Numbered from the stretch's first letter, positions 9,938 to 62,822 are shown. The stretch is DNA of 64,000 nt from Macrostomum lignano (GCA_002269645.1 NIVC01003912.1:1-64000), one strand, 5' to 3'. Notes: generated by a model not told the origin, from the sequence alone. Translations and numbers: made by a program.

Positions 9938-11126
9938 ACCACTGTGTCCATCAGTAGCACCCAGTATCCCCCTGTGTCCATCAGTAGCACCCAATATCCC
10001 CCTGTGTCCATCAGTAGCCCCCAATATCCTGTGTCTATCAGTAGCACCCAATATCCCCTGTGTCCATCAGTAGCCCCCAATATCCCCCTGTGTCCATCAG
10101 CAGCCCCCAATATCCCCCTGTGTCCATCAGTAACCCCCAATATCCCCACTGTGTCCATCAGTAGCCCCCAAAATCCCCCTGTGTCCATCAGTAGCCCCCA
10201 ATACCCCCCTGTGTCCATCAGTAACCCCCAAAATCCCCCTGTGTCCATCAGTAGCCCCCAATACCCCCCTGTGTCCATCAGCAGCCCCCAATATCCCCCT
10301 GTGTCCATCACTAGCACCCAATATCCTGTGTCCAGTAGCACCCAATATCCTGTGTCCATCACTAGCACCCAATATCCTGTGTCCATCAGTAGCACCCAAT
10401 ATCCTGTGTCCATCACTAGCACCCAATATCCTGTGTCCATCAGTAGCACCCAATATCCTGTGTCCATCACTAGCACCCAATATCCTGTGTCCATCAGTAG
10501 CACCCAATATCCTGTGTCCATCACTAGCACCCAATATCCTGTGTCCATCACTAGCCCCCAATATCCTGTGTCCATCTGTAGCCCCCAATATCCCCCTGTG
10601 TCCATCAGTAGCCCCCAATATCCCCCTGTGTCCATCAGCAGCCCCCAATATCCCCCTGTGTCCATCAGTAGCCCCCAATATCCCCCTGTGTCCATCAGTA
10701 GCCCCCAATATCCCCCTGTGTCCATCAGCAGCCCCCAATATCCCCCTGTGTCCATCGTAGCCCCCAATATCCCCCTGTGTCCATCAGTAGCCCCCAATAT
10801 CCCCCTGTGTCCATCAGCAGCCCCCAATATCCCCCTGTGTCCATCAGTAGCCCCCAATATCCCCCTGTGTCCATCAGTAACCCCCAATATCCCCCTGTGT
10901 CCATCAGTAGCCCCCAATATCCCCCTGTGTCCATCAGTAGCCCCCAATATCCCCCTGTGTCCATCAGCAGCCCCCAATATTCCCCTGTGTCCATCAGTAG
11001 CCCCCAATATCCCCCTGTGTCCATCAGTAGCCCCCAATATCCCCCTGTGTCCATCAGCAGCCCCCAATATCCCCCTGTGTCCATCGTAGCCCCCAATATC
11101 CCCCTGTGTCCATCAGTAGCCCCCAA
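9938..11126. repeat. 29-bp minisatellite (CCCCAATATCCCCCTGTGTCCATCAGTAGC-type), left part; includes 26-bp variant units
   Basis: About 40 tandem units starting about 50 nt after the M6PR donor. It breaks at ...CCCCAA (11126). Confidence 0.97.
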
Positions 11127-15490: not shown

Positions 15491-15545
15491 TTTAGATAGA
15501 TTAGATAGATTAGATTAGATTAGAAGATTAGAAGATTAGATTAGA
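15491..15545. repeat. (TTAGA)n/(TAGA)n microsatellite at the Helitron 5' terminus
   Basis: TTTAGATAGATTAGATAGATTAGATTAGATTAGAAGATTAGAAGATTAGATTAGA is directly visible. Confidence 0.9.
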
Positions 15546-16200
15546 TATCCCCCTGTGTCCATCAGCAGCCCCCAATATCCCCCTGTGTCCATCAGTAACC
15601 CCCAAAATCCCCCTGTGTCCATCAGTAGCCCCCAATATCCCCCTGTGTCCATCAGTAGCCCCCAATATCCCCCTGTGTCCATCAGCAGCCCCAATATCCC
15701 CTGTGTCCATCGTAGCCCCCAATATCCCCCTGTGTCCATCAGTAGCCCCCAATATCCCCCTGTGTCCATCAGCAGCCCCCAATATCCCCCTGTGTCCATC
15801 AGTAGCCCCCAATATCCCCCTGTGTCCATCAGTAACCCCCAAAATCCCCCTGTGTCCATCAGTAGCCCCCAATATCCCCCTGTGTCCATCTGTAGCCCCC
15901 AATATCCCACTGTGTCCATCAGCAGCCCCCAATATCCCCCTGTGTCCATCAGTAACCCCCAAAATCCCCCTGTGTCCATCAGTAACCCCCAATATCCCCC
16001 TGTGTCCATCAGTAACCCCCAAAATCCCCCTGTGTCCATCAGTAACCCCCAATATCCCCCTGTGTCCATCAGTAACCCCCAATATCCCCCTGTGTCCATC
16101 AGTAACCCCCAAAATCCCCCTGTGTCCATCAGTAACCCCCAATATCCCCCTGTGTCCATCAGCAGCCCCAATATCCCCACTGTGTCCATCAGCATCCCAA
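15546..16200. repeat. Same 29-bp minisatellite, right part
   Basis: Resumes exactly in register (TATCCCCC...) at 15546 and runs for about 22 units, ending about 18 nt before the M6PR acceptor. Confidence 0.97.
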
Positions 16201-17719: not shown

Positions 17720-18400
17720 CACATCCGTCAAGTTCTCATGCGTGACCTCAACATGTGCCCAGTTCTCATGCGCGACCTCACAGTGTGCCCAGTTCTCATG
17801 CACGACCTCACAGTGCGCCCAGTTCTCATGCGTGACCTCACAGTGTGCCCAGTTCTCATGCACGACCTCACAGTGTGCCCAGTTCTCATGCGTGACCTCA
17901 CAGTGTGCCCAGTTCTCATGCACGACCTCACAGTGTGCCCAGTTCTCATGCACGACCTCACAGTGTGCCCAGTTCTCATGCGCGACCTCACAGTGTGCCC
18001 AGTTCTCATGCACGACCTCACAGTGCGCCCAGTTCTCATGCGTGACCTCACAGTGTGCCCAGTTCTCATGCACGACCTCACAGTGTGCCCAGTTCTCATG
18101 CGTGACCTCACAGTGTGCCCAGTTCTCATGCACGACCTCACAGTGTGCCCAGTTCTCATGCACGACCTCACAGTGTGCCCAGTTCTCATGCGCGACCTCA
18201 CAGTGTGCCCAGTTCTCATGCACGACCTCACAGTGTGCCCAGTTCTCATGCACGACCTCACAGTGTGCCCAGTTCTCATGCGTGACCTCAACATGTGCCC
18301 AGTTCTCATGCGTGACCTCAACATGTGCCCAGTTCTCTTGCATGACGTCACTATGTTCACAGTTCTCATGCGGGACCTCCAGACCACATCCGTTATTTCT
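17720..18400. repeat. 30-bp minisatellite AGTTCTCATGC(A/G)(C/T)GACCTCACAGTG(T/C)GCCC, about 22 copies with degenerate edges
   Basis: Exact 30-nt periodicity; the 60-nt lines repeat. The ORFs in all frames are repeat translations. Confidence 0.97.
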
Positions 18401-27922: not shown

Positions 27923-28180
27923 CCAGTGCCAGGGACGCCAGTGCCAGGGACGCCAGTGCCAGGGACGCCAGTGCCAGGGACGCCAGTGCCAGGGACGCCA
28001 GTGCCAGGGACGCCAGTGCCAGGGACGCCAGTGCCAGGGACGCCAGTGCCAGGGACGCCAGTGCCAGGGACGCCAGTGCCAGGGACGCCAGTGCCAGGGA
28101 CGCCAGTGCCAGGGACGCCAGTGCCAGGGACGCCAGTGCCAGGGACGCCAGTGCCAGGGACGCCAGTGCCAGGGACGCCA
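27923..28180. repeat. Perfect 15-bp tandem repeat CCAGTGCCAGGGACG, about 17 copies
   Basis: Directly visible, with no mismatching units. It lies about 270 bp upstream of the sushi-gene ATG. Confidence 0.98.
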
Positions 28181-29637
28181 TGTCAGAGTGCAGGAGGTGC
28201 CAGCAAAAGGAACGCCATTTACTCTGTTTGGACACCCAAAATCTCGGGTGCTAAAGCTACGACGAGCATTCCGAAATTAATCTACCCGTCATTTTTAATG
28301 CAGCGTACCTTTAAAGTTTAGCGCAAATTCAAGTGCAATATTATTTAGTCGCAGTTGAAAAGTACGAACTAGGCAGCTTGTCTGAGATTTTCACAAGCTG
28401 TAAAAGCAATCCGATCAGGAAATATAAGAAATACAGATGGATTTAGTCCGGAAATGTCTTCATTGAGCGTGAAGCAACCAGATGACGCGGCATCCGTTAG
28501 TGAAGTAACTTTTTTATTAATTTTAATGCTTTTCCTTTTAATCTGTTCAGCTTTATTGTGAGTGCGTCATCTGTTGCACTCATGGTTCGTGTAGCGATCA
28601 CTGTGTACAGGTTAGATAGTTTATTGTAGTCACATTACACACTCTGCAGCAGTGTTTTCATGCTGTTTCACCCTGAAGATGCACCACGGAGTGCGAAACG
28701 CGTCGACTTACAAATGTTGTTTGTTGGTTTTTTATTCTTTCTGTTTGAATAAAATGATAAAAGCTAGTTAACAAGCAACCGAGCGAATATAAAAATTGAA
28801 TCTTGAATATCTGGCAAGCTATTTTGAGTCCAAAAGTTTATTTCTTTCATCGGGGTGAATTTAAGTCACCAGAGAAGTTCATATCTAAGAAAAAAGTTCT
28901 AAGCACTCGTAGATTCGATAAGAGATGTTAACGTCGTCTAAAGGAAACAGTTTTTCGAATACAAATAGATAAAGTCGAAGCAAGTGAGTTTGTCTAAAAT
29001 CACTCAGTAATTTTTAGCATCAACACGAATATGGAAAACAGCGATTACTACATAAATAAAAGGTATTATTTGTTCGTAAAGTTTGGTTCAATAAAAGCAT
29101 TGTGTCTAAAAACTAAAAGCCACTTGAAAAATTCTCCGTATCTAGCTGGCGAAAAGGCTTAAAAGATAGGGATCAAAATGCCCTCTTATTTGTGACGTGA
29201 GGGCAAGATGGACTCTTAGAGTGCATCGAGTGCATCCACCTGGGCCGAGCGCCATTAATTGAAGGTATGGAGTTCATAGTCTGGTGACCTTGATAGCTCG
29301 CCCTCTTTGTACGTGACTGACGATCCAGCTGCACTGAACCATCCTACTAAACATTAATGTCAATATTTTTGAAATACGGAGGACTTTTAAATGGCTCAAC
29401 TAGAAAAAAATACTAAAATCTACTGCGTGCGTACATATACCGATTTGCGTATAAATCTGACAGAGTAACAAAAAATATAGTTCTACGTGTAGAAGTAGTC
29501 AGATCATTTTTGGTCTTACAGCTCTTGCTAAAACACTCACTACACCTAGAAGGCTACACTAGCAGTAAACTCATCTAGTCTGTCCAATAAGAGTAGTTTC
29601 TTAATAGTATTTCAGGTTGCTCCATTCCCTCACTCGC

Positions 29638-32600
29638 TCAGCTCTCGACTCTCGACTTTGCGATGGACCCGTCTCCCTGAGCATTTCCTGTCGTAGGAAG
29701 GACACGGGTGCGCGTTAATGCAAGTAATGAAAAATACTAAAATCAATTTCTCAGAACAAATATCGCTAAGTAATCTTTTTTACTTGTGAGCGAGTACACG
29801 TTCATTTGTGATTGAGTCGCATAGTTTTTAATATGAAGACCAAACCCTATAGAACAGTGTGTGCAATAAAGTGCCTACTACGTACAGCTTCGCACGCAAA
29901 CAAAAAATGTAGCCCACCGAAAGAGCTCCTTACCGTTTTCCAACGGGGTGGTGCAAACTTGACTGGAATGACACCGACCGGCCAACTTGTCTCCGTTGCT
30001 CTCGGGTCACGCACCGTATTCAAATCATTCCTTAAGTTGCTCTCATGTTCTTCTGGGACTTTAGAGTTTCGGTTGCTCCTTCGCATAAGCAGAAGGACTA
30101 CTATAAAAGTCCCAATTAGGCAAAGGGCACCAACTGAAGCACCAACAGCGATGGAAATAATGTTGGTGTTGTTGCTGCTAGTCCTTACAGTAGGCTGCAT
30201 AGCTGTTTTTACGTCCAGCACCCGCAGGTACTCCCAGGAGACCGTCAGGCTGCTGTTGCTCAGGCCAAGTAGCACGAGCTGGCGGTTGTTCATGAGCTGC
30301 ACCAGCAAATAAACAGCGAAGGAAGCACTAGTGTTGGCACCAGACTGACTGTTGACGGTAAAACTGATAAGAACGCTGCCATTTGCAAACTGCATGTCGG
30401 TTAGTTGCGACTCAGCGAGCCTTAGCTGACGCGCAAGCTGACTCGTCAGGTGGCCTTGAAGGCGGCTTTCGTCTGTAACGACGTTAGAGAATGACTCTGT
30501 GACCCTAATTTGGAGTGCCACAGCTATAGTGTCCGTCTCTGAGAGTGTCGGAGCCGTTACACGGGGTAATATAGTCGTCGTGATGCTGTTCCAAAGCGTT
30601 GCAGCTGAAGTTTGCGTCTCTGAGAGTGTCGCCGACGTACTAGTGGGTTCCTGAGTAGAAGTGATGGTACTCTGAGAAGTGCTAGACAAACTCGGCGCTT
30701 TCGAAAGTGTCGCAGATGTACTAGTGGGTTCCTGAGTAGAAGTGATGGTACTCTGAGAAGTGCTAGACAAACTCGGCGCTTTCGAAAGCGTCGCAGACGT
30801 ACTAGTGGATTCCTGAGTAGAAGTGATCGTACTCTGAGAAGTGCTAGACAAACTCGGCGCTTTCGAAAGTGTCGCAGACGTACTACTGGGTGCCTGAGTA
30901 GAAGTGATGGTACTCGAAAAAGACACAGATGAGGTATGCATCTCCGAAATTGTAGTCGTTAAGCGAGATTCAAGTGTTGTTTCAAACGTCGTCCTTGCCT
31001 GGCCAATCTCACTTTCGGTGGTAGATGGAGCGATGGTTGTCTCCGGTTGGAAGCCTGGTGGTCCCTCAAAAACGCCAATAAATGAAGATATGTCATGGCA
31101 CACACACGTTACGTGCCAGATGCCATCGTCGGTCTGGAATGGCGCGCGAGTCGTGCAGTTATCCGGGGTCCAGTCGGCTCCGCTCCAGCTACGGCAGATG
31201 AGGCTGATGCTACTAAGATTCACAGAGCCACTGATGTTGGTGGTGATAGTCACACCATTGCTGAGGCGTGAAACATTCTGGTTCGCACCGTCGCTCGGGT
31301 GAAATATTCCTACGTAGGCCAGAGGACTGCGTCGCGGGGGAATCGTCGGAGAAGCCACTTTGGCCTGTGGAGTGAGCAGATCCTTGTCCAGCAGGATGGT
31401 TCCGATGCAGGCACCGTCCTGGAAGCAGTCAGTCTGGCCACATGACCAGTTATAGTAGCGCTGCTCGAGATCGGCACCAAGTGCAACCTGTTGACGGACT
31501 GTGAAATTGGATAGACAGTCGGTGCTTCCTGAGTCACATCCCATCTCCAGATTGGCTGAACCGACTGAGTTGAAAGACGTCTTGTACACGCGTACAACGG
31601 TCATTGTGGATGCTGCCGCCTGAGCTAGCGAGTTCGGATTTTGACTGTTGCAGAAGGCAGGAACGGTGTTAAGAATTGTAGCCTGGATATCAGCAGCTGT
31701 TGTCGAATCGAGCGTGGAGTGATAGACTCCGGATGCGATGTCGAGGACGGACTTCACTTCAGTGGCAGTTATTTTGCTTGTTGTTCCACGCTGAGATCCC
31801 GACGCGTTGCGCCTTCGCCTTCTTTTTGCGCTGTCTGGCGAAGCTGGTGAAAACGACTGAGAGTGAAACGCATCAAGGCACTTTTTAAGAGTGTTCAGTA
31901 CCAAGTTAGTTATATACTGGCTGTTGGCTCTCGTTTTCCGAAACAGTTGACAGCTTGTTGCAGCCCTGAGACAGGAAACCGATGGCACACTGAAATTATC
32001 GATAAAGTTTGAATATAATACTGCCCTTTAGTTATTTTACACTATTGACAGGTTGGTTTTCTGTTAAAAAAGTGTATTACTATTTAGCATGACTTATATA
32101 CCTTGTGTCTAAAGTCAGAAGATCCCGAATCACCAGTTCCTGCACCAGCTAATTCTTCTTGTTCTTTTCCTCGGACGACAGGCCAGTATCTGGCTCACTC
32201 AGGATCATTCCGCATAGTGCTGGACCGTCAACTACAATACAATATATCAAATGGATACCTAGTTAATTTGAATTCGAAACTAAATAGAAATAGGAAATAC
32301 GAGCTAACTTAATCGCCCTCACAGCTGTTTGAAATATTGTTCAAGTTGTTTAGTAAATCGTCGAGCTTGGCAAGCGTCAGCTGCTTCGCTTGCACCTGAA
32401 TTACAGTAGTAAATGAGAACCAATCGGAGCCTGCTCCGTTAGAGTCGATGGCTGAAGCTTTGCAGATCCAGTTTCCTCCAGGTAGACGAGTGGTGAGCAG
32501 TCTAGCGGGTGTTGGTTCACTAGTTACGCTGACGCACTGGCTTGATGAATCTTGGCGACAGCACATGGCGCTGTAACTGAAGGACACGTCGGAATCGTCA

Positions 32601-35600
32601 GTGATATTCGGCCATATGGTGAGCGTGAAGGGTGTCTCCAGAGCGGCTCCTTGACTGGGAGTCACAGACAGTGATGCATTCACGCGGAAGTCGAACTGGG
32701 CCTGAGCGGTCCCGGAACTGGCGCTGGCGATCAAAAGCAGTCGGTAGGAGACACCGGCAGCAAAGCTGCAGCTTCGTCCTGGCTTAAGAACCAAAGTGAT
32801 GAAGCAGCGTCGATTGGGTACGCATGTATCGGTCAGCGGCGGTCCTACTGAGCACTGCTGAAGCGACAGCGAGCCAAAGCCAGTCTCTTGAGTATCCACA
32901 GACCATTGAGTCTGAGTGATCTCACTGGAAATCACTAAAGCTGTCACCGGGACAGCAGCGTTTGGATTGATTGGTTTGTTGCTCGGCTCGGTCAAGATCC
33001 GGACTGATGGAGGCGGACGAGACAAAATCTGCACAAGCTTTGTACGACTGGACCGTCGCTGACCCCGCTGACAACTCACAGTGAGGTTCATGAAGCCTGA
33101 GGGTAGCTCGTATACACTGGGATCCGGCCAAGGCACTTGGATACTGTTCGATGATGTCTGAGTTCCATCCGAACCGAAGAAGCATGGTCCCAGTGTGTAT
33201 GTTGCGCATGTAGATTGCCTCACCGTTGGCCCACTTGGTCAGATAGAAGGTGCAAAATGTCGTCTCAGTCGAGTAGTCTGGATCGATGATGTACACGGAT
33301 TCCTGCAGTGCATCGCTGACGCCGAGATCAGAGCGACCTCCGCGGACGAACATGAGAACCAGAGGGCGGCTGATCGTCTCCAGAAGCAAAAAGCCGCACG
33401 CCACGTTGGGCCAAGTCGGCATGGAAGCGCAGACACTCAGGTTGTAGGACTGGCCTCCTTGCAGGACTCCAGATCTCAGTCGGAAGAATTTACCTGTGAT
33501 CGCCTGTTGGTCCACATTGATGGCTCTGGTGCCACCGACGATCTTCCACTTGTACTGCAAAATTAAAATGTGGAGAATCACGCCTGATGGCAGTGTAGGT
33601 GCAAGAGCCTAAAGGTATACTATTGTATAGCAGACAGCAGGTGTACTTTATATTCGATAGTACGAGCTAAGACATTTCAGAGATATGCTCATTGAGATTT
33701 TGTTGCAAATTTTGCTTCTCTTATCATACTATGATGCATGATTTATACAATAAGCGTTCTCAGAGTACTGTTACTTACACTCAGAGTGCCGATAGCCTTG
33801 GTATAGCAAAATGACGGTCGTACAAAAAGCACAGCGCTGTACCAAAGATCGGGCTTCACATACTTTTGCTGTCCGAAGATACTAATGCTAAATGGCGTTT
33901 TTTCAACGAGTCGTTTAACTATGATGCTCGCCGTATTCGACTGTGTTCCGCATTCGTTCTGGGCAGAAGCCGTGATGTTGTATGACTCCCCAGGCGGAAT
34001 CTGAAGAATAAAGCAAGATTTGAGACTGTAAATATTATAATTTTTTTTGAGTAATATCTTCTGACTTAAGCGCTTGAGATCACTAACATCCTTTCCGGCG
34101 TAGAAAGTGACTTCTGTGGAAAACTTTGACTGGAATGCGGCCAGCTCAGTTGCTTGACAAGCTGAGCCTGCAGCACACCGGATGTCCCAAGTGATCTGCT
34201 GCACCATCGATCCTCTGATGGTGGCATACAGGTTGAACGAGTCACAGAGTCCGACGGTGGCCACCTGGTTGGCATCTGATTGAACTCCGGCCAAAAAGAT
34301 GACAGGTGGCTTCCGACCGTTTGCATTCACAACAGCGGTGCTGACACTGGAACTGGTGGCCAGGCTGATGTCGCTGCCACCCACATAAATGATATTCGAA
34401 TTGATGCTGATTCGAGAGCCAGAGCAGATTGTTGCGCCACGTCCTTTCCACACGATGAGAGCGTTTGCCCTCGCGTAGCACTTTGGGCCAGCGCAAAAGT
34501 CGACGCATCAAAGATGGCCGAGCACGCCGTCTGTCGCAGCTGGATGTTTGTGTCGAACTGGAGATACAGGTGGTAGCCACTAGCGTCATCAGTTGCTGAG
34601 AGCAGCACCGGACCCTTACTCGAGCGGATCGAGAACGGCAGAGAGTTGTGCCTGGTCGGTGATTGCAAGAGGTGTAACCGATGTGTCACTTGGTGTAAAT
34701 CATTGCATTCATACTTGCAGCAATAAAAACAAACCACTCACTTGAACACCGCATATGCATCGTAGCTAAGTGTTTGCAGCTTGCAGTTCATGACGCTGAG
34801 CTTCCATTGCAGCGACTGTCGGACTTCGGCCAGCGCAGAGATATTGCAGGTGACGCTTGTCGCGCTGTCGAATCTGGCCGGCACAGTGAGAAAGCCAGTG
34901 CGCGGGTCGCATCGGGTGTGGCGGCTAAGATCGTCGCAGTAGAGAAGGCAGACGAGATCGGGCGTGTTGACGAATCCCTGTCCGCTCACTGGCAGAGAGT
35001 AAACGGGATTTTCTAGCGTGAGTCTGCTCCCGACACTCAAGCTGGACAAGCTGGGAGCTCCAAAAACAGTCAAGGTTCCACCGGAAACGTCCTCGATGAC
35101 TGTAGCACCGGAAGCGGTCAAGTATTTAACCTGTAGAGCGTACTCGCGAGCAACGAGACCCGAGGGCACAGAAAAGCGGAACAGACCAGAAGATACATCG
35201 ATGGATATTGCTTGAAGCTCCGTGTAGAGCGACTGTCAATGTGAGGGCGGAAGAAGTAGTTTGTATTTTATCAACGTAAATTACAAAGTTATCAATTGAA
35301 GCTTATAAATTTTGAGTATTGCTGGACTTGCTATCTATTTTGCTAATAATCGCCTAAATCTACATCTGTAAATACATCTGTAAGTAAACCTTTAGGCGCG
35401 TTGCCACTAAATTAGGCCATTAATCGTCACTATCAGGATAAACGGCTTGTACTATTTTTTTCGCCGCGTTTTACATCGTCGTGTAATTTACATTTGTGCA
35501 ATTTGATAGCGGTGTACGTAAAAGAGCCTTTAGTTATATTATTGCAAAAATGGAATTGATGTCTTACCCAATCGGTCACTTTCAGCAGGCGCAGAGTGAT

Positions 35601-44689: not shown

Positions 44690-45595
44690 TTGACTCTTAG
44701 TGGGTGCCCCTGTCTCCTAGGTTGGGTGCCCCCACTGCCCCTGTCTCCTAGGTTGGGTGCCCCCACTGCCCCTGTCTCCTAGGTTGGGTGCCCCCACTGC
44801 CCCTGTCTCCTAGGTTGGGTGCCCCCACTGCCCCTGTCTCCTAGGTTGGGTGCCCCCACTGCCCCCGTCTCCTAGGTTGGGTGCCCCCACTGCCCCCGTC
44901 TCCTAGGTTGGGTGCCCCCACTGCCCCCGTCTCCTAGGTTGGGTGCCCCTGTCTCCTATAGGTGGGTGCCCCCACTGCCCCTGTCTCCTAGGTTGGGTGC
45001 CCCCACTGCCCCCGTCTCCTAGGTTGGGTGCCCCCACTGCCCCCGTCTCCTAGGTTGGGTGCCCCCACTGCCCCTGTCTCCTAGGTTGGGTGCCCCCACT
45101 GCCCCCGTCTCCTAGGTTGGGTGCCCCCACTGCCCCCGTCTCCTAGGTTGGGTGCCCCCACTGCCCCCGTCTCCTAGGTTGGGTGCCCCCACTGCCCCCG
45201 TCTCCTAGGTTGGGTGCCCCTGTCTCCTATAGGTGGGTGCCCCGTCTCCTAGTTTGGGTGCCCTTGTCTCCTATAGGTGGGAGCCCCTGTCTCCTATAGG
45301 TGGGTGTCCCGTCTCCTAGGTTGGGTGCCCCTGTCTCTTAGTTTGGGTGCCCTTGTCTCTTATAGGTGGGTGCCCCTATCTCCTAGGTGGGTGCCCTTGT
45401 CTCAGCTATAGGTGGGTGCCCCTGTCTCAGCGATAGGTGGGTGCCCCTGTCTCAGCTATAGGTGGGTGCCCCTGTCTCCTAGGTGGGTGCCCCTGTCTCC
45501 TAGGTGGGTGCCCCTGTCTCAGCTATAGGTGGGTGCCCCTGTCTCCTATAGGTGGGTGCCCCTGTCTCAGCTATAGGTGGGTGCCCCTGTCTCTC
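44690..45595. repeat. Minisatellite: 31-bp unit GCCCCCACTGCCCC(T/C)GTCTCCTAGGTTGGGT grading into 21-25 bp units GCCCCTGTCTC(CT/AGCT)(AT)AGGTGGGT
   Basis: Period 31 from about 44710 to 45200, then shorter variants to 45595. Confidence 0.95.
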
Positions 45596-56100: not shown

Positions 56101-58668
56101 TCTCCCTGCTGCAGTACGGCGAGCCGCAGCAGTGCAAAGAGCTGCGCAGCCTGCCTGAGTTCTTTCTAGAGGACATGTGCGAACTGCTCGTGCTGGTAAT
56201 CGAATTCCAGCCCGGCTACTTCAAGCAGACTCCCGTGCCGCGCTGCTTCCGCCTGGTGATTGCGGCTCTGTCCCATCCGTATCCGCTGGTGCGCAATCCC
56301 CACTTGGTGTCCAAGCTAGTTGAGATATTATTTTACCTTGATCCCACTGTGCAGCCTCGTATGGAGGCTCAGTTCCATGACCTGGTGATGCAGCAGTGGA
56401 GTCTGGATGGATTAGTCACTAGCCTGTTGCAATTCTACGTGGAAGTTGAAAGCACGGGCTCGAGCAGCGAGTTCTACGACAAGTTCACCATTCGCTATCA
56501 CCTGGCCACTATATTTCACAGCCTCTGGGCGACCCACCTGCACAGGGAGCAGTTCCGTCGACAGTCTCAGAATCCCGTATTTGTACGATTTGTCAACGTG
56601 TTGATTAACGATGCCACCTACCTGTTGGACGAGAGTCTCGGCTGTTTGAAACGAATCCGAGAGATTCAGGACCTTGCAGATTCCGGCTTTCAAGGCTGCA
56701 CCGCCGAGCAGCAGGGAGAACTTAAACAGGAGCTGAATAACAATGAGAGACAGGTGCGTTTATGTTATACGGGTGCAAGACTTGTAAGGAACAGTTGGTT
56801 TGGACGGTGTTAGCCAATAAAATGTTCCGCGCCAATGAAATGTGGAGTGGGGTGGGTAATTTTTGTATTCATCTCAGCCAATTAGAAGTTGCTGAAGTGA
56901 AGTGGTGCCTTTTCTATTCGCTGTAGTCAATAAGAAATGACTGGGTGTGAGTTGCGTGACTTCTCTATTTGTCTCAGCCAATGAGAGGCGACTGGAGTGA
57001 GGTGGGTGACTTCTCTGATTGTCTTAGCCAATGAGAAGCGGCTGGAGTGAGTAAGATGGCTTCTCTGTTTGTCTCAGCCAATGAGAAGCGGCTAGAGTGA
57101 CGTGGGTGACTTCTCTATTCGTCTCAGCCAATGAGAAGCGAATAGAGTGAGGTGGGTAGCTTCTCTATCCATGCCAGGCAAAAAGGAGCGACTTCGTAGA
57201 GGGTTATTATTGATTTCTCCCAGCCAAAAATTTTCCACAAACTGACCTAACACCAACCTGCAGGTGAAATCCTACCTGACCCTGTCGCTAAAAACGGTGG
57301 AAATGTTCAACTACCTGACTCAAGAGCTGCCCAGGGCTTTCATGAACGGCGAACTAGTGGAGCGGTTAGCAACTATGCTCAACTACAATCTCAAGCAGCT
57401 CTGCGGCAGCAAGTGCAACACTTTAAAAGTCCGAAGTCCGGACAAATACGGCTGGGAGCCGAGGTCCATGCTGAGCAATTTTATCACCATCTACTTGAAT
57501 CTGGCCGTCCAGCCCGAGTTCCAGGAGGCCATTGTGAATGACGAGCGCAGCTACTCGGAGTCGCTGCTCCCCCAGGCTATCGAACGGATCCGACGGGCCG
57601 GCATTCGCTCCGAGATGGATCTGCAGGTGCTGGAGCGGCTGCGGGAGCGGACAGACGAGATCGCCAATGCCAGGCGGCAGGTTGACTTGGACTATGACAA
57701 TGCGCCGGACGAGTTCATGGACGAGATGATGTTCACTCTCATGTCCGACCCTGTGGAGCTGCCCACTGGACAGGTGCGTGTTGTTTGCATGTCTGCCTGT
57801 CAATAGCTGTGCCAGCCTCTCAGGTCCTCTGTTGCTAAGGCCACCCTCCCAGATCCTCAGTTGCTAGGCCAGCCTCCCAGATCCTCAGTTGCTGGGCCAG
57901 CCTCCCAGATCCTCAGTTTCTGGGCCAGCCTCCCAGAGTGTCAGTTGCTAGGCCACCCTCCCAGGTCCTCTGTTGCTAAGGCCAGCCTCCCAGATCCTCA
58001 GTTGCTGGGCCAGCCTCCCAGATCCTCAGTTGCTGGGCCAGCCTCCCAGATCCTCAGTTGCTGGGCCAGCCTCCCAGATCCTCAGTTTCTGGGCCAGCCT
58101 CCCAGAGTGTCAGTTGCTAGGCCACCCTCCCAGGTCCTCTGTTGCTAAGGCCAGCCTCCCAGATCCTCAGTTGCTGGGCCAGCCTCCCAGATCCTCAGTT
58201 GCTGGGCCAGCCTCCCAGATCCTCAGTTGCTGGGCCAGCGTCCCAGATTCTCAGTTGATAGGCCACCCTCCCAGATCCTCAGTTGCTGGGCCAGCCTCCC
58301 AGATCCTCGGTTGCTAGGCCAGCCTCCCAAATCCTCAGTTTCTAGGCCAGCCTTCTCAGTTGCTAGGCCACTCTCCCAGATCCTCAGTTGCTAGGCCAGC
58401 CTTCTCAGTTGCTTTGCCAGATCCTCTTCAACTGTCTGCCGCAGCCTGACCCCCTGCTGTCTCCCCCTTTCTAAACTTTCAGATTTTGGACCGAGCCACC
58501 ATCAGGCGCCACCTGTTGAACTCGGCCACCAATCCCTACTCAAAGATGCCCATGTCCGAGTCCGATCTGAAAGAGCTGCCGGAGCTTCGCAATCGAATTG
58601 CCGCTTGGAAAGCCGAACGGGACGCCGAGAGACGAGGCGGAGCTCGAGGTGAGCCAATGCAGCACTGA
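53147..58668 (+). CDS. UBE4B: Ubiquitin conjugation factor E4 B (Ufd2 core plus U-box), six exons
   Basis: Exons 53147-53737, 54028-54381, 55071-55343, 56031-56753, 57264-57773 and 58483-58668, with all internal junctions phase 0 GT-AG (about 878 aa). Diagnostic motifs: SSEFYDKFTIRYH (UBE4B-type), FVRFVNVLINDATYLLDESL, VERLATMLNYNLKQLCGSKC..LKV, and U-box [37 protein letters not shown]. The N-terminus may be incomplete. Confidence 0.93.
54405..55015. repeat. Mixed 16/19-bp minisatellite (CAGGTGGTGCAAGGG(T/A) and CAGGTGGTGCATCAAGGGG) filling UBE4B intron 54382-55070
   Basis: Directly visible, with dozens of CAGGTG motifs. Confidence 0.95.
56810..57230. repeat. Degenerate 50-bp tandem repeat (TCTCAGCCAATGAGAAGCGGCTGGAGTGAGGTGGGTGACTTCTCTATTTG) in UBE4B intron 56754-57263
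   Basis: TTCTCT recurs at 56961, 57011, 57061, 57111 and 57161; the copies at the edges are more diverged. Confidence 0.88.
57810..58425. repeat. 28-bp minisatellite GTTGCT(A/G)GGCCAGCCTCCCAGATCCTCA with higher-order variants, in UBE4B intron 57774-58482
   Basis: Period 28. A 29-nt GCTAAGG variant recurs at 57831, 57972 and 58141. Confidence 0.95.
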
Positions 58669-58873
58669 ACTGGGCTGGTGTAGCACCCACAGACTGATTG
58701 CGTCACCTCTGCATCATCAAATCTTTTTATTACATTTTGATGCATTTCTTTGTTGAGGTCCTGTCCACACTAGTTAAAATCGATGGCCCTTACTGAAGTA
58801 ATGTGCGAGACAAGGCTTGACTGTCTCAGGTAAGGTGGCTTCTCTATTAGACGTTGGTGATACGTCTAATAGG

Positions 58874-59416
58874 TGAGATCTTAGATCTACTGTCTCATAG
58901 GTGAGATCTCACTGCTACTGTCTCATAAGTGAGATATCACTGCTACTGTCTCATATGTGAGATATCACTGCTACTGTCTCATAGGTGAGATATCACTGCT
59001 ACTGTCTCATAGGTGAGATCTCAGTGCTACTGTCTCATAGGTGAGATCTCACTGCTACTGTCTCATAGGTGAGATATCACTGCTACTGTCTCATAGGTGA
59101 GATCTCACTGCTACTGTCTCATAGGTGAGATATCACTGCTACTGTCTCATAGGTGAGATCTCACTGCTACTGTCTCATAGGTGAGATATCACTGCTGCTG
59201 TCTCATAGGTGAGATCTCACTGCTACTGTCTCATAGGTGAGATATCACTGCTACTGTCTCATAGGTGAGATCTCAGTGCTACTGTCTCATAGGTGAGATC
59301 TCACTGCTACTGTCTCATAGGTGAGATATCACTGCTACTGTCTCATAGGTGAGATCTCACTGCTACTGTCTCATAGGTGAGATCTCAGTGCTACTATCTC
59401 ACGGGTGAGATCTCAG
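58874..59416. repeat. 28-bp minisatellite CTACTGTCTCATAGGTGAGAT(C/A)TCACTG, about 19 copies, 3' of UBE4B
   Basis: Period 28. The C-variant units contain the perfect 12-bp palindrome GTGAGATCTCAC. Confidence 0.96.
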
Positions 59417-60000: not shown

Positions 60001-61157
60001 TCGGGTATTTAACCATTTCAGTTCCTTTGGAATATAAACCATTTCCGGTCCTTCGATTGGGTGTATAACCACTTCCGGTCCTTTCATTGGGTGTATAACC
60101 ACTTCCGGTCCTTTCATTGGGTGTATAACCACTTCCGGTCCTTTCATTGGGTGTATAACCACTTCCGGTCCTTTCATTGGGTGTATAACCATGCACTTCC
60201 GGTCTTTTCATTGGGTGTATAACCACTTCCGGTCCTTTCATTGGGTGTATAACCACTTCCGGTCCTTTCATTGGGTGTATAACCACTTCCGGTCCTTTCA
60301 TTGGGTGTATAACCACTTCCGGTCCTTTCATTGGGTGTATAACCATGCACTTCCGGTCTTTTCATTGGGTGTATAACCACTTCCGGTCCTTTCATTGGGT
60401 GTATAACCACTTCCGGTCCTTTCATTGGGTGTATAACCATGCACTTCCGGTCTTTTCATTGGGTGTATAACCACTTCCGGTCCTTTCATTGGGTGTATAA
60501 CCACTTCCGGTCCTTTCATTGGGTGTATAACCACTTCCGGTCCTTTCATTGGGTGTATAACCATGCACTTCCGGTCTTTTCATTGGGTGTATAACCACTT
60601 CCGGTCCTTTCATTGGGTGTATAACCATGCACTTTCGGTCCTTTCATTGGGTGTATAACCACTTCCGGTCCTTTCACTGGGTGTATAACCACTTCCGGTC
60701 TTTTCATTGGGTGTATAACCACTTCCGGTCCTTTCATTGGGTGTATAACCACTTCCGGTCCTTTCATTGGGTGTATAACCATGCACTTCCGGTCTTTTCA
60801 TTGGGTGTATAACCACTTCCGGTCCTTTCATTGGGTGTATAACCACTTCCGGTCTTTTCATTGGGTGTATAACCACTTCCGGTCCTTTCATTGGGTGTAT
60901 AACCACTTCCGGTCCTTTCATTGGGTGTATAACCATGCACTTCCGGTCCTTTCATTGGGTGTATAACCATGCACTTCCGGTCCTTTCATTGGGTGTATAA
61001 CCACTTCCGGTCCTTTCACTGGGTGTATAACCACTTCCGGTCTTTTCATTGGGTGTATAACCACTTCCGGTCCTTTCATTGGGTGTATAACCACTTCCGG
61101 TCCTTTCATTGGGTGGATAACCATGCACTTCCGGTCCTTTCATTGGGTGCATAACTA
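60001..61157. repeat. 30-bp minisatellite TTCCGGTC(C/T)TTTCATTGGGTGTATAACCAC with interspersed 34-bp (+TGCA) units, about 37 copies
   Basis: The 34-bp variant occurs at 60191, 60345, 60439, 60563, 60627, 60781, 60935, 60969 and 61123. Confidence 0.97.
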
Positions 61158-62822
61158 CTAGCACTTCCAATGCTGAGTTACCTTACTACCCGAGTCTCTC
61201 TATCGTTACTGTTTTGTTGAAATACCAATTCTCAGTGTCAAATAACCACATAGACTATTTAGTGCTTACAGTAGTGTTGTGTTGCTCTTTCATGCAAAAT
61301 TAAAGTCCTTAACTGCAACTTACTCGCTCTCTCAGCTTCTCTGTTCGGTTTGCGTTTGAGTTGTGTTATAAAAATGCTAACTGTTTTGGTGCTGATATTA
61401 TAGCTGGACTGTTCTGTGACAGCCCTGACGTGGGTAACTTTTGCAAACTGTTGCAGCAGGCTTGGTTCTTGGCTTATGTTAATAAAAATGTAAGATTATA
61501 TCTGTAATCATCTTAATCAAACAAGTATCAATAAATTAATGTGCGACAATTGTTTGCCAGAGACAATCTGGCAGAAGCCAAATTGTGCGTTATGCTGATT
61601 TAAATCTATCCTTTGTGGTTCTTGTTTCTATATTGATGGTTAGGAGAAGCGTTGCTCCAGTGTGCTCGCAGCTCGCGATTGTCTGGCGAGCGCCGGTAGG
61701 CATAGACAAATCGTTGTCACGTGCTGCGACCGCTGATTCTTTGCATTGTTTTTCTGTTTGACGATCCTACAGACAATGCATTGTTTGTAGTAATGATTGT
61801 TCTGCATAAAATATGCGAATAATGATCGTCAAATTGCTAAACAATGGCCATAGACGATAAGAAAATTCATTTACTTTGCCATCAATTATTTAATTGCTTG
61901 CTGGCATTCTCTACTAGCTTGCAAAATGCTATATTACACTTTTAAAGTGAGGTCCGAGAGAAGTTGCTTTCTGGAGCAAAGGGTGGCGAGTTATCAATGT
62001 TGCTGAGCATACTAATTAAATGCGCTTTTCATGTTACTATTATCTTGTACTTTCGATTTACATGTGCAACTTTCCAATACATTACTGTGAAGAAGCATCG
62101 AAGTAATGCTTTATGGTTGCTCTGCGGTTTTACAACAACCGCCGCAATATAAAGCACTTTGCTGCTGCAAAGCTCGTAAGACGCTTAAAAGATAAAACAG
62201 CATCAATGTATATTTATAATGTTTTATAATCAGATTGGCCGAAGTTGAAGCCCGATGGGACTGTAGGGTTTAGGGCTCTGCATCCGGATCCCGGGTATTG
62301 GGGTGCAACTAAAAAGAAGGGGCTACAACATCTGCAAAAATCCCCGTATTCATTGACACTTAGCTGCATAACCTTCAAAACTACATATCCCCAACCTTCA
62401 TACCCCCATCCCTAATATGCATGCCCCCAATATGCATATCCCCAATGTCCCCAATATGCATATCCCCTATATGAATATCCTCAATATGCAACGTAGAATT
62501 GAGGCAGGCTACATTTCTTTAATAATATTATATAGACAAAGCCAACAAGAAACCCTTTCTTTTCCGAGTATTTGTGGATAACGATGGCGAATAAAACTAA
62601 AACTTTATTTGTACAACATGTTTCGTTGAACATACAGCATCGTCAGGTAGAATAAAATATTTGTGAGACCAACGGGGTAAGAAAGACGCAAAAATATATA
62701 TTTTATCAATTAGAGCATGGTGTACCAAAAAGCTAGAATTGAACAACATTAAAATTACAGAGTCGATAGAACTAAAGTGCACACTGCATGCTGCCTCTCC
62801 CTGCTAATTGAACGCTAAACAC

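What the first reader, a model, noticed from the sequence alone, without database searches (positions are those of the whole stretch)
29638..35570. Single-pass receptor with REJ-GAIN-mucin-SEA-TM order: polycystin-like ectodomain but no channel or 7TM
Seen in sequence: after the GPS motif (about 31080-31200) the same exon continues into a Ser/Thr stalk with 27-aa repeats, a SEA-like domain (IAVALQIRVTESF...FANGSVLISFTV, about 30280-30530), one hydrophobic helix (about 30090-30170) and a short tail. Established: GAIN/GPS domains normally sit directly N-terminal to a 7TM (adhesion GPCRs) or to the first TM and PLAT of PKD1-family proteins; where SEA and GAIN co-occur (ADGRF group), SEA is N-terminal to GAIN. 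Inference: this is an unusual architecture with two force-sensitive, potentially autoproteolytic modules in series on a mucin tether. It is a candidate mechanosensing, shedding or gamete/adhesion receptor.
Basis: partly seen in the sequence, partly recalled or inferred. Interest (0 to 1): 0.85.

Follow-up and report, generated by a model that had tools for sequence, protein, structure and literature searches.

The report
Broken flatworm REJ-GAIN single-pass glycoprotein gene
This is a copy, probably disabled, of a Macrostomum lignano (flatworm) gene for a single-pass surface glycoprotein with a polycystin-type REJ and GAIN/GPS ectodomain; the GPS sits far from the membrane and lacks its cleavage residues, and the proposed SEA domain could not be confirmed.

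Summary
They are a Pfam REJ domain, a GPS motif (31202-31068), an S/T-rich stalk with 3.6 copies of an 81-bp (27-aa) repeat, a small juxtamembrane domain, one TM helix (30161-30084) and a short tail. GPS through TM lie in one exon (31989-29934). No PLAT, channel or multi-TM exons follow, and the next gene has its own signal peptide.

GAIN/GPS is supported only through a bridge. A metagenomic homologue has a Pfam GPS in register, and a joint profile hits adhesion-GPCR GAIN structures. The motif has lost His(-2), the stacking Phe and the Gly of Gly-Cys, so self-cleavage at the GPS is unlikely.

SEA is not supported by Pfam, profile searches or Foldseek. What remains is a beta-alpha-beta-beta-alpha order, a conserved G-S-V-L-I hairpin and purifying selection (dN/dS 0.24).

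The source is Macrostomum lignano. A paralogue, BOX15_Mlig013328g1, encodes the same order intact with a short linker. The window copy has two frameshift deletions and one nonsense codon relative to it.

Single-pass REJ+GPS proteins (sea urchin SpREJ1, 8, 9) and SEA+GAIN proteins (ADGRF1) are already known. Verdict: a new variant of a known kind, of moderate interest.

The parts
34742..35232 (-). Exon E (ectodomain, upstream of REJ)
   Evidence: Acceptor and donor scores. Homologous to P0010 residues 1-100. dN/dS against the paralogue 0.79 on very few changes.
34088..34650 (-). Exon E2+F1, carrying a 10-nt frameshifting deletion at ~34489 relative to the paralogue
   Evidence: DNA alignment of window and L002: GATGGGTTCA is missing here, and the frame changes from ...FDASTFAL to ...GPKCYARANAL.
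33779..34000 (-). Exon F2
   Evidence: Homology with P0010 exon 6569-6790 of L002.
32323..33554 (-). Exon G+H: the REJ domain. It is one exon in the paralogue; here it is broken by a 14-nt deletion at ~33183.
   Evidence: Pfam REJ PF02010, E=4.8e-10, on 33091-32326; P0010 scores 3.5e-17. Deletion of GCTGTCCTCATTCA. dN/dS 0.11.
32102..32231 (-). Small exon (start of the helical GAIN subdomain A) with an in-frame TAG at 32151-32149, where the paralogue has GAG
   Evidence: tblastn of P0010 residues 787-827; translation and DNA alignment.
29934..31989 (-). Large exon I: rest of GAIN, GPS, S/T stalk, SEA-like domain, TM and most of the tail in one ORF of 685 codons
   Evidence: ORF. The acceptor phase matches the small-exon donor as in P0010. 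Donor AAAACG|GTAAGG scores 9.2.
31068..31202 (-). GPS motif LICRSWSGADWTPDNCTTRAPFQTDDGIWHVTCVCHDISSFIGVF; degenerate cleavage site D-I-S at about 31094-31086
   Evidence: In register with the Pfam-certified GPS of L001. The joint profile hits aGPCR GAIN structures. The sequence is identical in the paralogue.
30531..31067 (-). S/T-rich (51%) mucin-like stalk, 179 aa. It includes the 81-bp x 3.6 tandem repeat at 30625-30915.
   Evidence: TRF; composition. A 402-nt in-frame insertion relative to the paralogue, whose linker is about 45 aa.
30210..30530 (-). Juxtamembrane alpha/beta domain ('SEA-like') with a conserved N/S-G-S-V-L-I hairpin (30366-30383)
   Evidence: AF2 secondary structure b1-a1-b2-b3-a2 with G|S in the b2-b3 turn, pLDDT 44.7. 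dN/dS 0.24 at dS 0.86. No Pfam, PDB or Foldseek support for SEA.
30084..30161 (-). Single transmembrane helix IISIAVGASVGALCLIGTFIVVLLLM
   Evidence: Kyte-Doolittle scan: the only segment above threshold in exon I. Followed by RRSNRNSK (positive-inside). Conserved in the paralogue.
29601..30083 (-). Short cytoplasmic tail: 30083-29934, then (after an intron) the last exon 29687-29601. In the frame used by the paralogue the stop would be at 29641-29639.
   Evidence: No Pfam domain. The tail is not conserved between the paralogues.

Best explanation
The window holds one of at least two recently diverged copies of a Macrostomum lignano gene. The gene encodes a type-I, single-pass surface glycoprotein from the non-channel branch of the PKD1/REJ family.

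Domain order, shown for this copy and the paralogue:
1. a large Cys-rich ectodomain;
2. a REJ domain;
3. a GAIN-like domain (helical part, then beta part) ending in a GPS motif;
4. an S/T-rich stalk, presumably O-glycosylated;
5. a small alpha/beta juxtamembrane domain with a conserved G-S-V-L-I hairpin;
6. one TM helix;
7. a short, non-conserved tail without a recognisable signalling domain.

Inferred mechanism. The protein works like sea urchin REJ1 fused to a transmembrane-mucin anchor. The ectodomain binds a ligand or matrix. The GAIN domain is a structural remnant that no longer cuts itself, because His(-2), the stacking Phe and the Gly of Gly-Cys are all replaced. It cannot act as a tethered agonist, because 150-300 residues and only one TM helix follow it. 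If the ectodomain is shed or senses force, that most plausibly happens at the G|S hairpin of the juxtamembrane domain. Any signal would pass through partner proteins.

State of this copy. It has expanded its stalk through an 81-bp repeat. It also carries two frameshifting deletions and one nonsense codon upstream of exon I, so it is probably a decaying duplicate. The intact architecture is that of the paralogue BOX15_Mlig013328g1.
For: Organism and locus:
- The REJ exon is 99% identical to UniRef100_A0A1I8FVC6 of M. lignano.
- The paralogue P0010 is NCBI BOX15_Mlig013328g1.

REJ: Pfam E=4.8e-10 here and 3.5e-17 in P0010.

GAIN/GPS:
- Colinear alignment with the metagenomic homologue L001, and BLASTP E=1e-8 over the GAIN-B plus GPS part.
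- L001 has Pfam GPS at 3.5e-12 at the aligned positions.
- A joint profile gives adhesion-GPCR GAIN chains as its top 8 PDB hits, best ADGRG3 7qu8 at E=1.4e-4.
- The predicted order is helices, then strands.

Loss of cleavage residues: with residue roles from PMC13062082.

Single TM and nothing downstream. The next minus-strand gene starts with its own signal peptide at about 27694.

The region after the GPS is coding and constrained: dN/dS is 0.24 at dS 0.86 for SEA-like plus TM (Fisher p=3e-12), 0.26 for GAIN and 0.11 for REJ.

Lesions. P0002, predicted from a slightly different sequence of this locus, contains the frame-shifted peptide TMLLRFGWNSDIIEQYPS. The 14-nt deletion is therefore not private to this window.
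Against: - No transcript data were available, so splicing, expression and the pseudogene call are inferred.
- The lesions could be assembly or haplotype artefacts, or could be bypassed by alternative splicing, as the automated model P0002 does.
- The paralogue L002 has its own 1-nt deletion in exon D, so neither copy is demonstrably full length.
- The GAIN fold was not confirmed in three dimensions (AF2 pLDDT 33.5; Foldseek meaningless).
- The profile hit to aGPCR GAINs depends on including L001.
- The SEA-like reading has no statistical support.
- Low dN/dS averages over both lineages and does not show that this copy is still under selection.
Confidence: 0.55

Rival explanations
1. This is a functional single-pass receptor in which a cleavable GAIN domain and a cleavable SEA domain act as two force-sensitive autoproteolytic modules in series on a mucin tether.
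For: The domain order is real and conserved in a paralogue. A G-S-V-L-I motif lies in a predicted beta-hairpin, at the position of the MUC1 G|SVVV site. ADGRF1 shows that SEA and GAIN can sit in one protein (PMC7060178), and that paper's reference list cites the report that Ig-Hepta is cleaved at both modules.
Against: The GPS lacks the His base, the stacking Phe and the Gly of Gly-Cys. SEA was not detected by Pfam, PDB profiles or Foldseek. This copy has three disabling lesions.
Confidence: 0.12
2. The window copy is a working gene. The three lesions are assembly or haplotype artefacts, or are bypassed by alternative splicing, giving an isoform that keeps the module REJ, GAIN-B, stalk, juxtamembrane domain, TM.
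For: Exon I is open for 685 codons. All indels inside it relative to the paralogue are multiples of three (+3, -6, +402, +9). dN/dS is well below 1 in every segment with enough changes. UniProt carries a gene model for this locus (P0002).
Against: Deletions of 10 and 14 nt and a G->T substitution are not typical long-read errors. The 14-nt deletion is also reflected in P0002, which differs elsewhere from the window. P0002 bypasses the lesions only through non-homologous joins, including one at 33183-33096 that has no GT-AG, and it removes the last GPS strands.
Confidence: 0.3
3. The juxtamembrane domain is not a SEA domain. It is an unrelated, lineage-specific alpha/beta domain, and the G-S-V-L-I match is coincidental.
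For: There is no Pfam SEA hit at E<=10. hhalign against MUC1 gives probability 2.8%. Alignment z-scores are 1.6-3.3. Adding these sequences to a MUC1 profile loses the hits to genuine SEA structures 1IVZ and 2E7V. Foldseek returns only generic ferredoxin-like folds.
Against: Genuine SEA domains barely detect each other (MUC1 against 1IVZ or 2E7V, E about 0.02), so a negative result is weak. The predicted b-a-b-b-a order, the hairpin position of G|S, invariance of GSVLISFT across dS 0.86, and the position after an S/T stalk just outside the membrane all fit transmembrane-mucin SEA modules.
Confidence: 0.4

Closest known systems
[quoted passage not shown]
   Same: Large glycosylated ectodomain with a REJ domain and a GPS upstream of a single TM segment. 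No channel domain (PMC1934368).
   Different: Here 150-300 residues (an S/T stalk plus an extra folded domain) separate the GPS from the TM, and the GPS cleavage residues are lost. The N-terminal modules differ: no C-type lectin or EGF was detected by Pfam.
Polycystin-1 / PKD1-like proteins
   Same: REJ followed by GAIN/GPS in the ectodomain.
   Different: No PLAT domain, no 11-TM or channel region, and no juxtamembrane GPS. A tethered-agonist mechanism is not possible.
Transmembrane mucins (MUC1 type): PTS repeats, SEA, TM, short tail
   Same: S/T-rich tandem-repeat stalk. A small b-a-b-b-a domain with a G-S-V-hydrophobic hairpin next to the membrane. One TM and a short tail.
   Different: SEA homology is not demonstrable. 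Proline is low (7%). The stalk is short in the paralogue. The N-terminal part is a REJ-GAIN ectodomain rather than mucin only.
ADGRF1/GPR110 and ADGRF5/GPR116 (Ig-Hepta), adhesion GPCRs
   Same: They combine a SEA module and a GAIN domain in one ectodomain (PMC7060178).
   Different: The order there is SEA, then GAIN, then 7TM, with GAIN at the membrane. Here it is GAIN, stalk, SEA-like domain, then a single TM.
Metagenomic homologue on JGI contig Ga0189854_1004157 (L001/P0001)
   Same: Colinear REJ plus GAIN/GPS (23% identity; BLASTP 1e-8 on GAIN-B), a single TM, and extra modules between GPS and TM.
   Different: It has a canonical GPS (CVFW, EGC, DHLT). Four laminin-type EGF repeats take the place of the SEA-like domain. 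Its TIG and PKD domains are detectable by Pfam. The source organism is unknown.

Membership tests
PKD1/REJ family | REJ domain | tested here: met
   Pfam PF02010: E=4.8e-10, 39.1 bits (cut-off 25) on the window exon; 3.5e-17 in paralogue P0010.
PKD1/REJ family | GPS/GAIN C-terminal to REJ | tested here: met
   Not detected by Pfam directly. It is colinear and in register with the Pfam GPS of L001, and the joint profile hits aGPCR GAIN chains at E=1.4e-4.
PKD1/REJ family | PLAT/LH2 domain after the first TM, and 11 TM with a channel-like region (absent in SpREJ1, 8, 9) | tested here: not met
   One TM only. There is no Pfam hit in the tail or in downstream minus-strand ORFs. Downstream ORFs are Sushi repeats of a separate gene.
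GAIN domain | GPS Cys/Trp pattern C-x2-W...W-x4-C...C-x-C | tested here: met
   C-RS-W, W-TPDN-C and C-V-C are aligned with L001 and with ADGRG3, ADGRG1 and ADGRL3.
GAIN domain | Catalytic H-x-S/T, plus the stacking Phe and the Gly-Cys | tested here: not met
   D-I-S, C-R-S-W and D-N-C in both M. lignano copies. Residue roles are taken from PMC13062082.
GAIN domain | Fold: helical subdomain A plus a 13-strand subdomain B | tested here: inconclusive
   The AF2 model has pLDDT 33.5. Only the order of 7 helices then about 11 strands agrees. Foldseek was uninformative.
GAIN domain | Position immediately before the first TM helix (Arac et al. 2012) | tested here: not met
   The GPS ends at 31068 and the TM starts at 30161, about 300 aa later. 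The gap is about 150 aa in P0010. The rule is quoted from PMC3321182.
SEA domain | Match to a SEA profile (Pfam PF01390) or to solved SEA sequences | tested here: not met
   No hit at E<=10. PDB profile searches were negative. hhalign probability 2.8%. Shuffle z-scores 1.6-3.3.
SEA domain | b-a-b-b-a-b fold with a G|S-V-V-V type site in the b2-b3 hairpin | tested here: inconclusive
   AF2 (pLDDT 44.7) gives b1-a1-b2-b3-a2 with G60-S61 in the hairpin turn; b4 is not modelled. Foldseek finds only generic ferredoxin-like folds, E>=0.018. GSVLI is conserved in the paralogue.
Transmembrane mucin | S/T-rich tandem-repeat (PTS) domain on a single-pass anchor | tested here: met
   51% S+T over 179 aa, with 81-bp x 3.6 repeats, and one TM. 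O-glycosylation itself is not testable here.
Adhesion GPCR | 7TM domain after GAIN | tested here: not met
   One hydrophobic helix, and no further TM-rich ORFs on this strand across 1-29850.

The most novel reading that the evidence does not exclude
Macrostomum (and, judging from contig L001, other eukaryotes) may have a so far undescribed branch of single-pass REJ-GAIN surface proteins in which the GAIN domain is uncoupled from the membrane. In the flatworm version the GPS would have lost autoproteolysis, and a juxtamembrane SEA-type module with a G|SVLI site would have taken over non-covalent tethering and force-dependent shedding. That would be a swap of one autoproteolytic tether for another within one protein lineage.
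Probability: 0.25. Interest if true: 0.6.

Novelty: new variant of a known kind. Interest (0 to 1): 0.4.

Why it matters
GAIN domains are understood mainly as juxtamembrane devices that hide a tethered agonist for a 7TM or 11TM core. Here a GAIN domain is followed by 150-300 further extracellular residues and a single helix, and the unrelated metagenomic contig L001 shows the same arrangement. In these proteins the fold must do something else, either structural or ectodomain release. If the juxtamembrane domain proves to be a cleaving SEA module, the protein would be a natural test of how the two known non-dissociating autoproteolytic tethers can replace each other. The practical weight is limited. 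The family seems narrow, this copy looks disabled, and single-pass REJ proteins and SEA+GAIN proteins are already known.

Tried and rejected
Searches and predictions that led nowhere:
- Pfam on whole exons and on isolated GPS, GAIN and SEA segments found no GPS or SEA.
- phmmer of exon I and of the REJ exon against PDB sequences found nothing.
- The word-indexed search of 5.8 billion proteins found nothing for exon I (probably swamped by S/T words). It found only P0001 for a REJ+GAIN composite and only P0010 for a two-sequence profile.
- Exhaustive phmmer of the REJ exon against 1.84 billion representatives found only the locus's own model P0002, plus five unrelated repeat proteins. The family is therefore very divergent or narrow.
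- AF2 on the SEA-like segment gave pLDDT 44.7 and on the GAIN region 33.5. Neither gave a specific Foldseek match.
- A metagenome scan with the REJ-GAIN alignment found nothing.

Models I rejected:
- My first splice model joined 32323 to 31843, as P0002 does. It was wrong.
- I considered that the Sushi-repeat ORFs at 24482-20179 were downstream exons of this gene. I rejected this because an ORF with a Met and a signal-peptide-like start lies at about 27694, and Sushi modules are extracellular.
- I considered counting a 7-nt gap in the tail as a fourth lesion. I rejected this because the DNA alignment there is too poor.

Full report
**What is in the sequence**

The finding lies in a multi-exon eukaryotic gene on the minus strand. 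The large exon 31989-29934 is one ORF of 685 codons. It encodes, in order:
- a helix-rich stretch, then a strand-rich stretch;
- the motif LICRSWSGADWTPDNCTTRAPFQTDDGIWHVTCVCHDISSFIGVF (31202-31068);
- a 179-aa stalk with 51% Ser+Thr (31067-30531), holding an 81-bp, 27-codon tandem repeat of 3.6 copies at 94% identity (30625-30915);
- a segment of about 107 aa, TIAVALQIRV...FANGSVLISFTV...LTVSWEYLRVLDV (30530-30210);
- one strongly hydrophobic helix (30161-30084);
- RRSNRNSK and a short tail, completed by a last exon at 29687-29601.

Upstream, the exon 33554-32323 carries a Pfam REJ domain (E=4.8e-10, above the gathering score).

**Where it comes from and how it is spliced**

An exhaustive search with the REJ exon found a 99% identical protein. 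This is P0002, UniRef100_A0A1I8FVC6 of Macrostomum lignano, an automated model of this locus.

A profile search then found P0010, NCBI BOX15_Mlig013328g1 ('PKD/REJ-like domain-containing protein', 1396 aa). P0010 is a paralogue on contig NIVC01001490.1, fetched as L002.

P0010 maps exon by exon onto the window. By that homology the exons in the window are:

| Exon | Coordinates |
|---|---|
| E | 35232-34742 |
| E2+F1 | 34650-34088 |
| F2 | 34000-33779 |
| G+H | 33554-32323 |
| small exon | 32231-32102 |
| I | 31989-29934 |
| last | from 29687 |

It also corrects my first model and P0002's model, which joined 32323 to 31843.

**No channel, no 7TM**

Exon I has exactly one TM segment. No cluster of hydrophobic segments occurs in any minus-strand ORF of 50 aa or more between 1 and 29850. 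The tail and the ORFs between 29343 and 24517 have no PLAT or PKD_channel hit. An ORF at about 27694 starts with Met and a signal-peptide-like stretch (MLFIVAKCLSSLALAVVFTASFC). It is followed by Sushi-repeat exons, so this is a separate gene.

**GAIN/GPS**

Pfam does not see a GPS in the flatworm protein. AlphaFold failed on it (pLDDT 33.5), and only the order of 7 helices then about 11 strands fits a GAIN domain. Support comes through a bridge:
- The only other relative found was P0001, on a 7.9-kb JGI metagenome contig (L001). It belongs to a gene that I spliced by eye.
- That gene reads: signal peptide, TIG, PKD, REJ (1e-41), GPS (PF01825, 3.5e-12, CSCDHLTEF), four laminin-type EGF repeats, an S/T/P stalk, one TM, tail.
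- The flatworm protein aligns colinearly with it through REJ and GAIN. BLASTP gives 1e-8 over the last 147 residues, with the GPS in register.
- A profile of the window, P0010 and L001 sequences returns adhesion-GPCR GAIN chains as its eight best PDB hits (ADGRG3 at 1.4e-4, ADGRG1 at 7e-4, then ADGRL3, ADGRG6 and ADGRB2). All are aligned over the GPS and the preceding strands.

I therefore accept GAIN/GPS homology, with the fold itself unverified.

**The GPS is probably dead**

| Determinant | L001 and cleaving aGPCRs | Both M. lignano copies |
|---|---|---|
| Stacking Phe | C-x-F-W | C-R-S-W |
| Gly-Cys motif | G-C | N-C |
| Cleavage site | D/N-H-L-T | H-D-I-S |

In the published mechanism the His at -2 is the base that activates the Ser/Thr nucleophile. 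The Phe positions that His by pi-stacking, and the Gly-Cys region hydrogen-bonds to it. Even an intact HLS site can fail to cleave (PMC13062082). All three determinants are replaced here, so self-cleavage at the GPS is unlikely. This is an inference.

The GPS is followed by about 300 residues here (about 150 in P0010, about 215 in L001) and then a single helix. The tethered-agonist mechanism of aGPCRs and polycystin-1 cannot apply. [quoted passage not shown]

**The 'SEA' domain**

Evidence that fits SEA:
- Single-sequence AF2 is of low confidence (pLDDT 44.7) but gives b1-a1-b2-b3-a2, with Gly60-Ser61 in the b2-b3 turn.
- MAFFT aligns the segment end to end with the MUC1 SEA domain, whose sequence I checked against PDB 2ACM/6BSB. 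G-S-V falls on the MUC1 G|SVVV cleavage site.
- GSVLISFT is invariant between the paralogues.

Evidence that does not support it:
- There is no Pfam SEA hit at E<=10.
- hhalign aligns only the hairpin, with probability 2.8%.
- Shuffle z-scores are 1.6-3.3.
- A profile of the two flatworm segments finds nothing in the PDB.
- MUC1 alone weakly finds the genuine SEA structures 1IVZ and 2E7V (E about 0.02). A profile of MUC1 plus the flatworm sequences loses them.
- Foldseek returns only generic ferredoxin-like folds.

I therefore call the domain SEA-like in position, predicted topology and motif, and do not count it as a demonstrated SEA domain.

**Is it coding and constrained?**

| Segment (window vs L002) | dN/dS | dS |
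|---|---|---|
| REJ | 0.11 | 0.10 |
| GAIN+GPS | 0.26 | 0.20 |
| SEA-like+TM | 0.24 | 0.86 |

All three are far below neutrality (p<=3e-8). The post-GPS region is thus a translated, selected part of the protein. It is not an intron, as P0002's model would have it for the last GPS strands and most of the stalk.

DNA identity is about 92-93% from 38246 to 31011, introns included. It is only 73% over the SEA-like and TM region. The two copies are therefore mosaics, with the break at the repetitive stalk.

**This copy looks disabled**

Against L002, inside exons that are otherwise about 95% identical, the window has three lesions:
- a 10-nt deletion at about 34489;
- a 14-nt deletion at about 33183, inside the REJ-region exon;
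- a GAG-to-TAG change at 32151-32149 in the small exon.

Every other exonic indel whose alignment is reliable is a multiple of three (-15, +3, -6, +402, +9).

P0002 avoids each lesion with non-homologous joins. It contains the frame-shifted peptide TMLLRFGWNSDIIEQYPS while differing from the window elsewhere (for example ADESVWC against ADEYIRSVWC). The 14-nt deletion is therefore not peculiar to this window.

L002 in turn lacks one base in exon D, and its NCBI model starts downstream of that point. M. lignano evidently carries several partly decayed copies. Without reads or transcripts I put the pseudogene reading of the window copy at roughly 60-70%.

**What it most likely is, and how new**

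It is a type-I surface glycoprotein of the non-channel REJ branch. Sea urchin SpREJ1, 8 and 9 already show REJ plus GPS plus one TM (PMC1934368). The anchor resembles that of a transmembrane mucin. SEA and GAIN are already known together in ADGRF1 and ADGRF5, in the opposite order and on a 7TM core (PMC7060178).

What is new is the combination and the order: a GAIN that is away from the membrane and apparently inactive, followed by a stalk and a conserved G-S-V-L-I domain. L001 adds evidence that 'REJ-GAIN-spacer modules-one TM' exists beyond flatworms.

The proposed functions (adhesion, shedding, gamete recognition) remain inference. I rate this a new variant of a known kind, with interest 0.4.

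Noticed in passing
window 43257-41974 and 39714-38329 (minus strand): Two paralogous modules of about 400 aa (55-61% identical), each preceded by a small Cys-rich exon (43354-43280, 41975-41844). They form the N-terminal part of the same gene in P0002. There is no Pfam hit, although UniProt names the protein 'ZP domain-containing'.
   Followed up: partly
window 37161-35568 (minus strand), especially about 36200-35650: Exon D encodes a Cys-rich region with a recurring D/N-x-C-G-x-C-x-G-G motif (DVCKICGGNG, NDCGNCVGG, NKCGFCTEG). It has no Pfam hit. This exon is intact here but carries a 1-nt deletion in paralogue L002 (at window position 35775).
   Followed up: partly
window 27694-20179 (minus strand): A separate downstream gene. 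Its first ORF has a signal-peptide-like start (MLFIVAKCLSSLALAVVFTASFC), followed by several large exons with Sushi/CCP repeats (Pfam PF00084, best E=3e-9).
   Followed up: partly
window 38246-31011 against 30566-30029, compared with L002: Divergence between the two M. lignano copies is mosaic: about 92-93% DNA identity (dS 0.03-0.2) upstream, introns included, but 73% (dS 0.86) in the SEA-like and TM part. The break is at the repetitive stalk. This suggests gene conversion of the 5' part, or exchange of the 3' cassette.
   Followed up: partly
window 9942-11126, 15545-16192, 17731-18379, 27923-28180, 44705-45593, 57811-58402, 58864-59415, 60037-61159: There are many minisatellites of 15-31 bp period, several with more than 20 copies at over 90% identity. 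One is a perfect 15-bp x 17 array between the two genes. They create long spurious ORFs in several frames.
   Followed up: no
L001 (JGI contig Ga0189854_1004157) 864-7285: A gene from an unknown eukaryote reads: signal peptide, TIG, PKD, REJ, canonical GPS, four laminin-type EGF repeats, S/T/P stalk, one TM. It is a second example of a GAIN domain that is not adjacent to the membrane. The splicing was done by eye.
   Followed up: partly
window 29687-29601: The last exon is read in different frames in the two copies: EMLRET...NLKYY* here with the canonical acceptor, against a frame homologous to NTQGGGSIEMSRVEN* in the paralogue. The cytoplasmic tail is therefore not conserved.
   Followed up: partly
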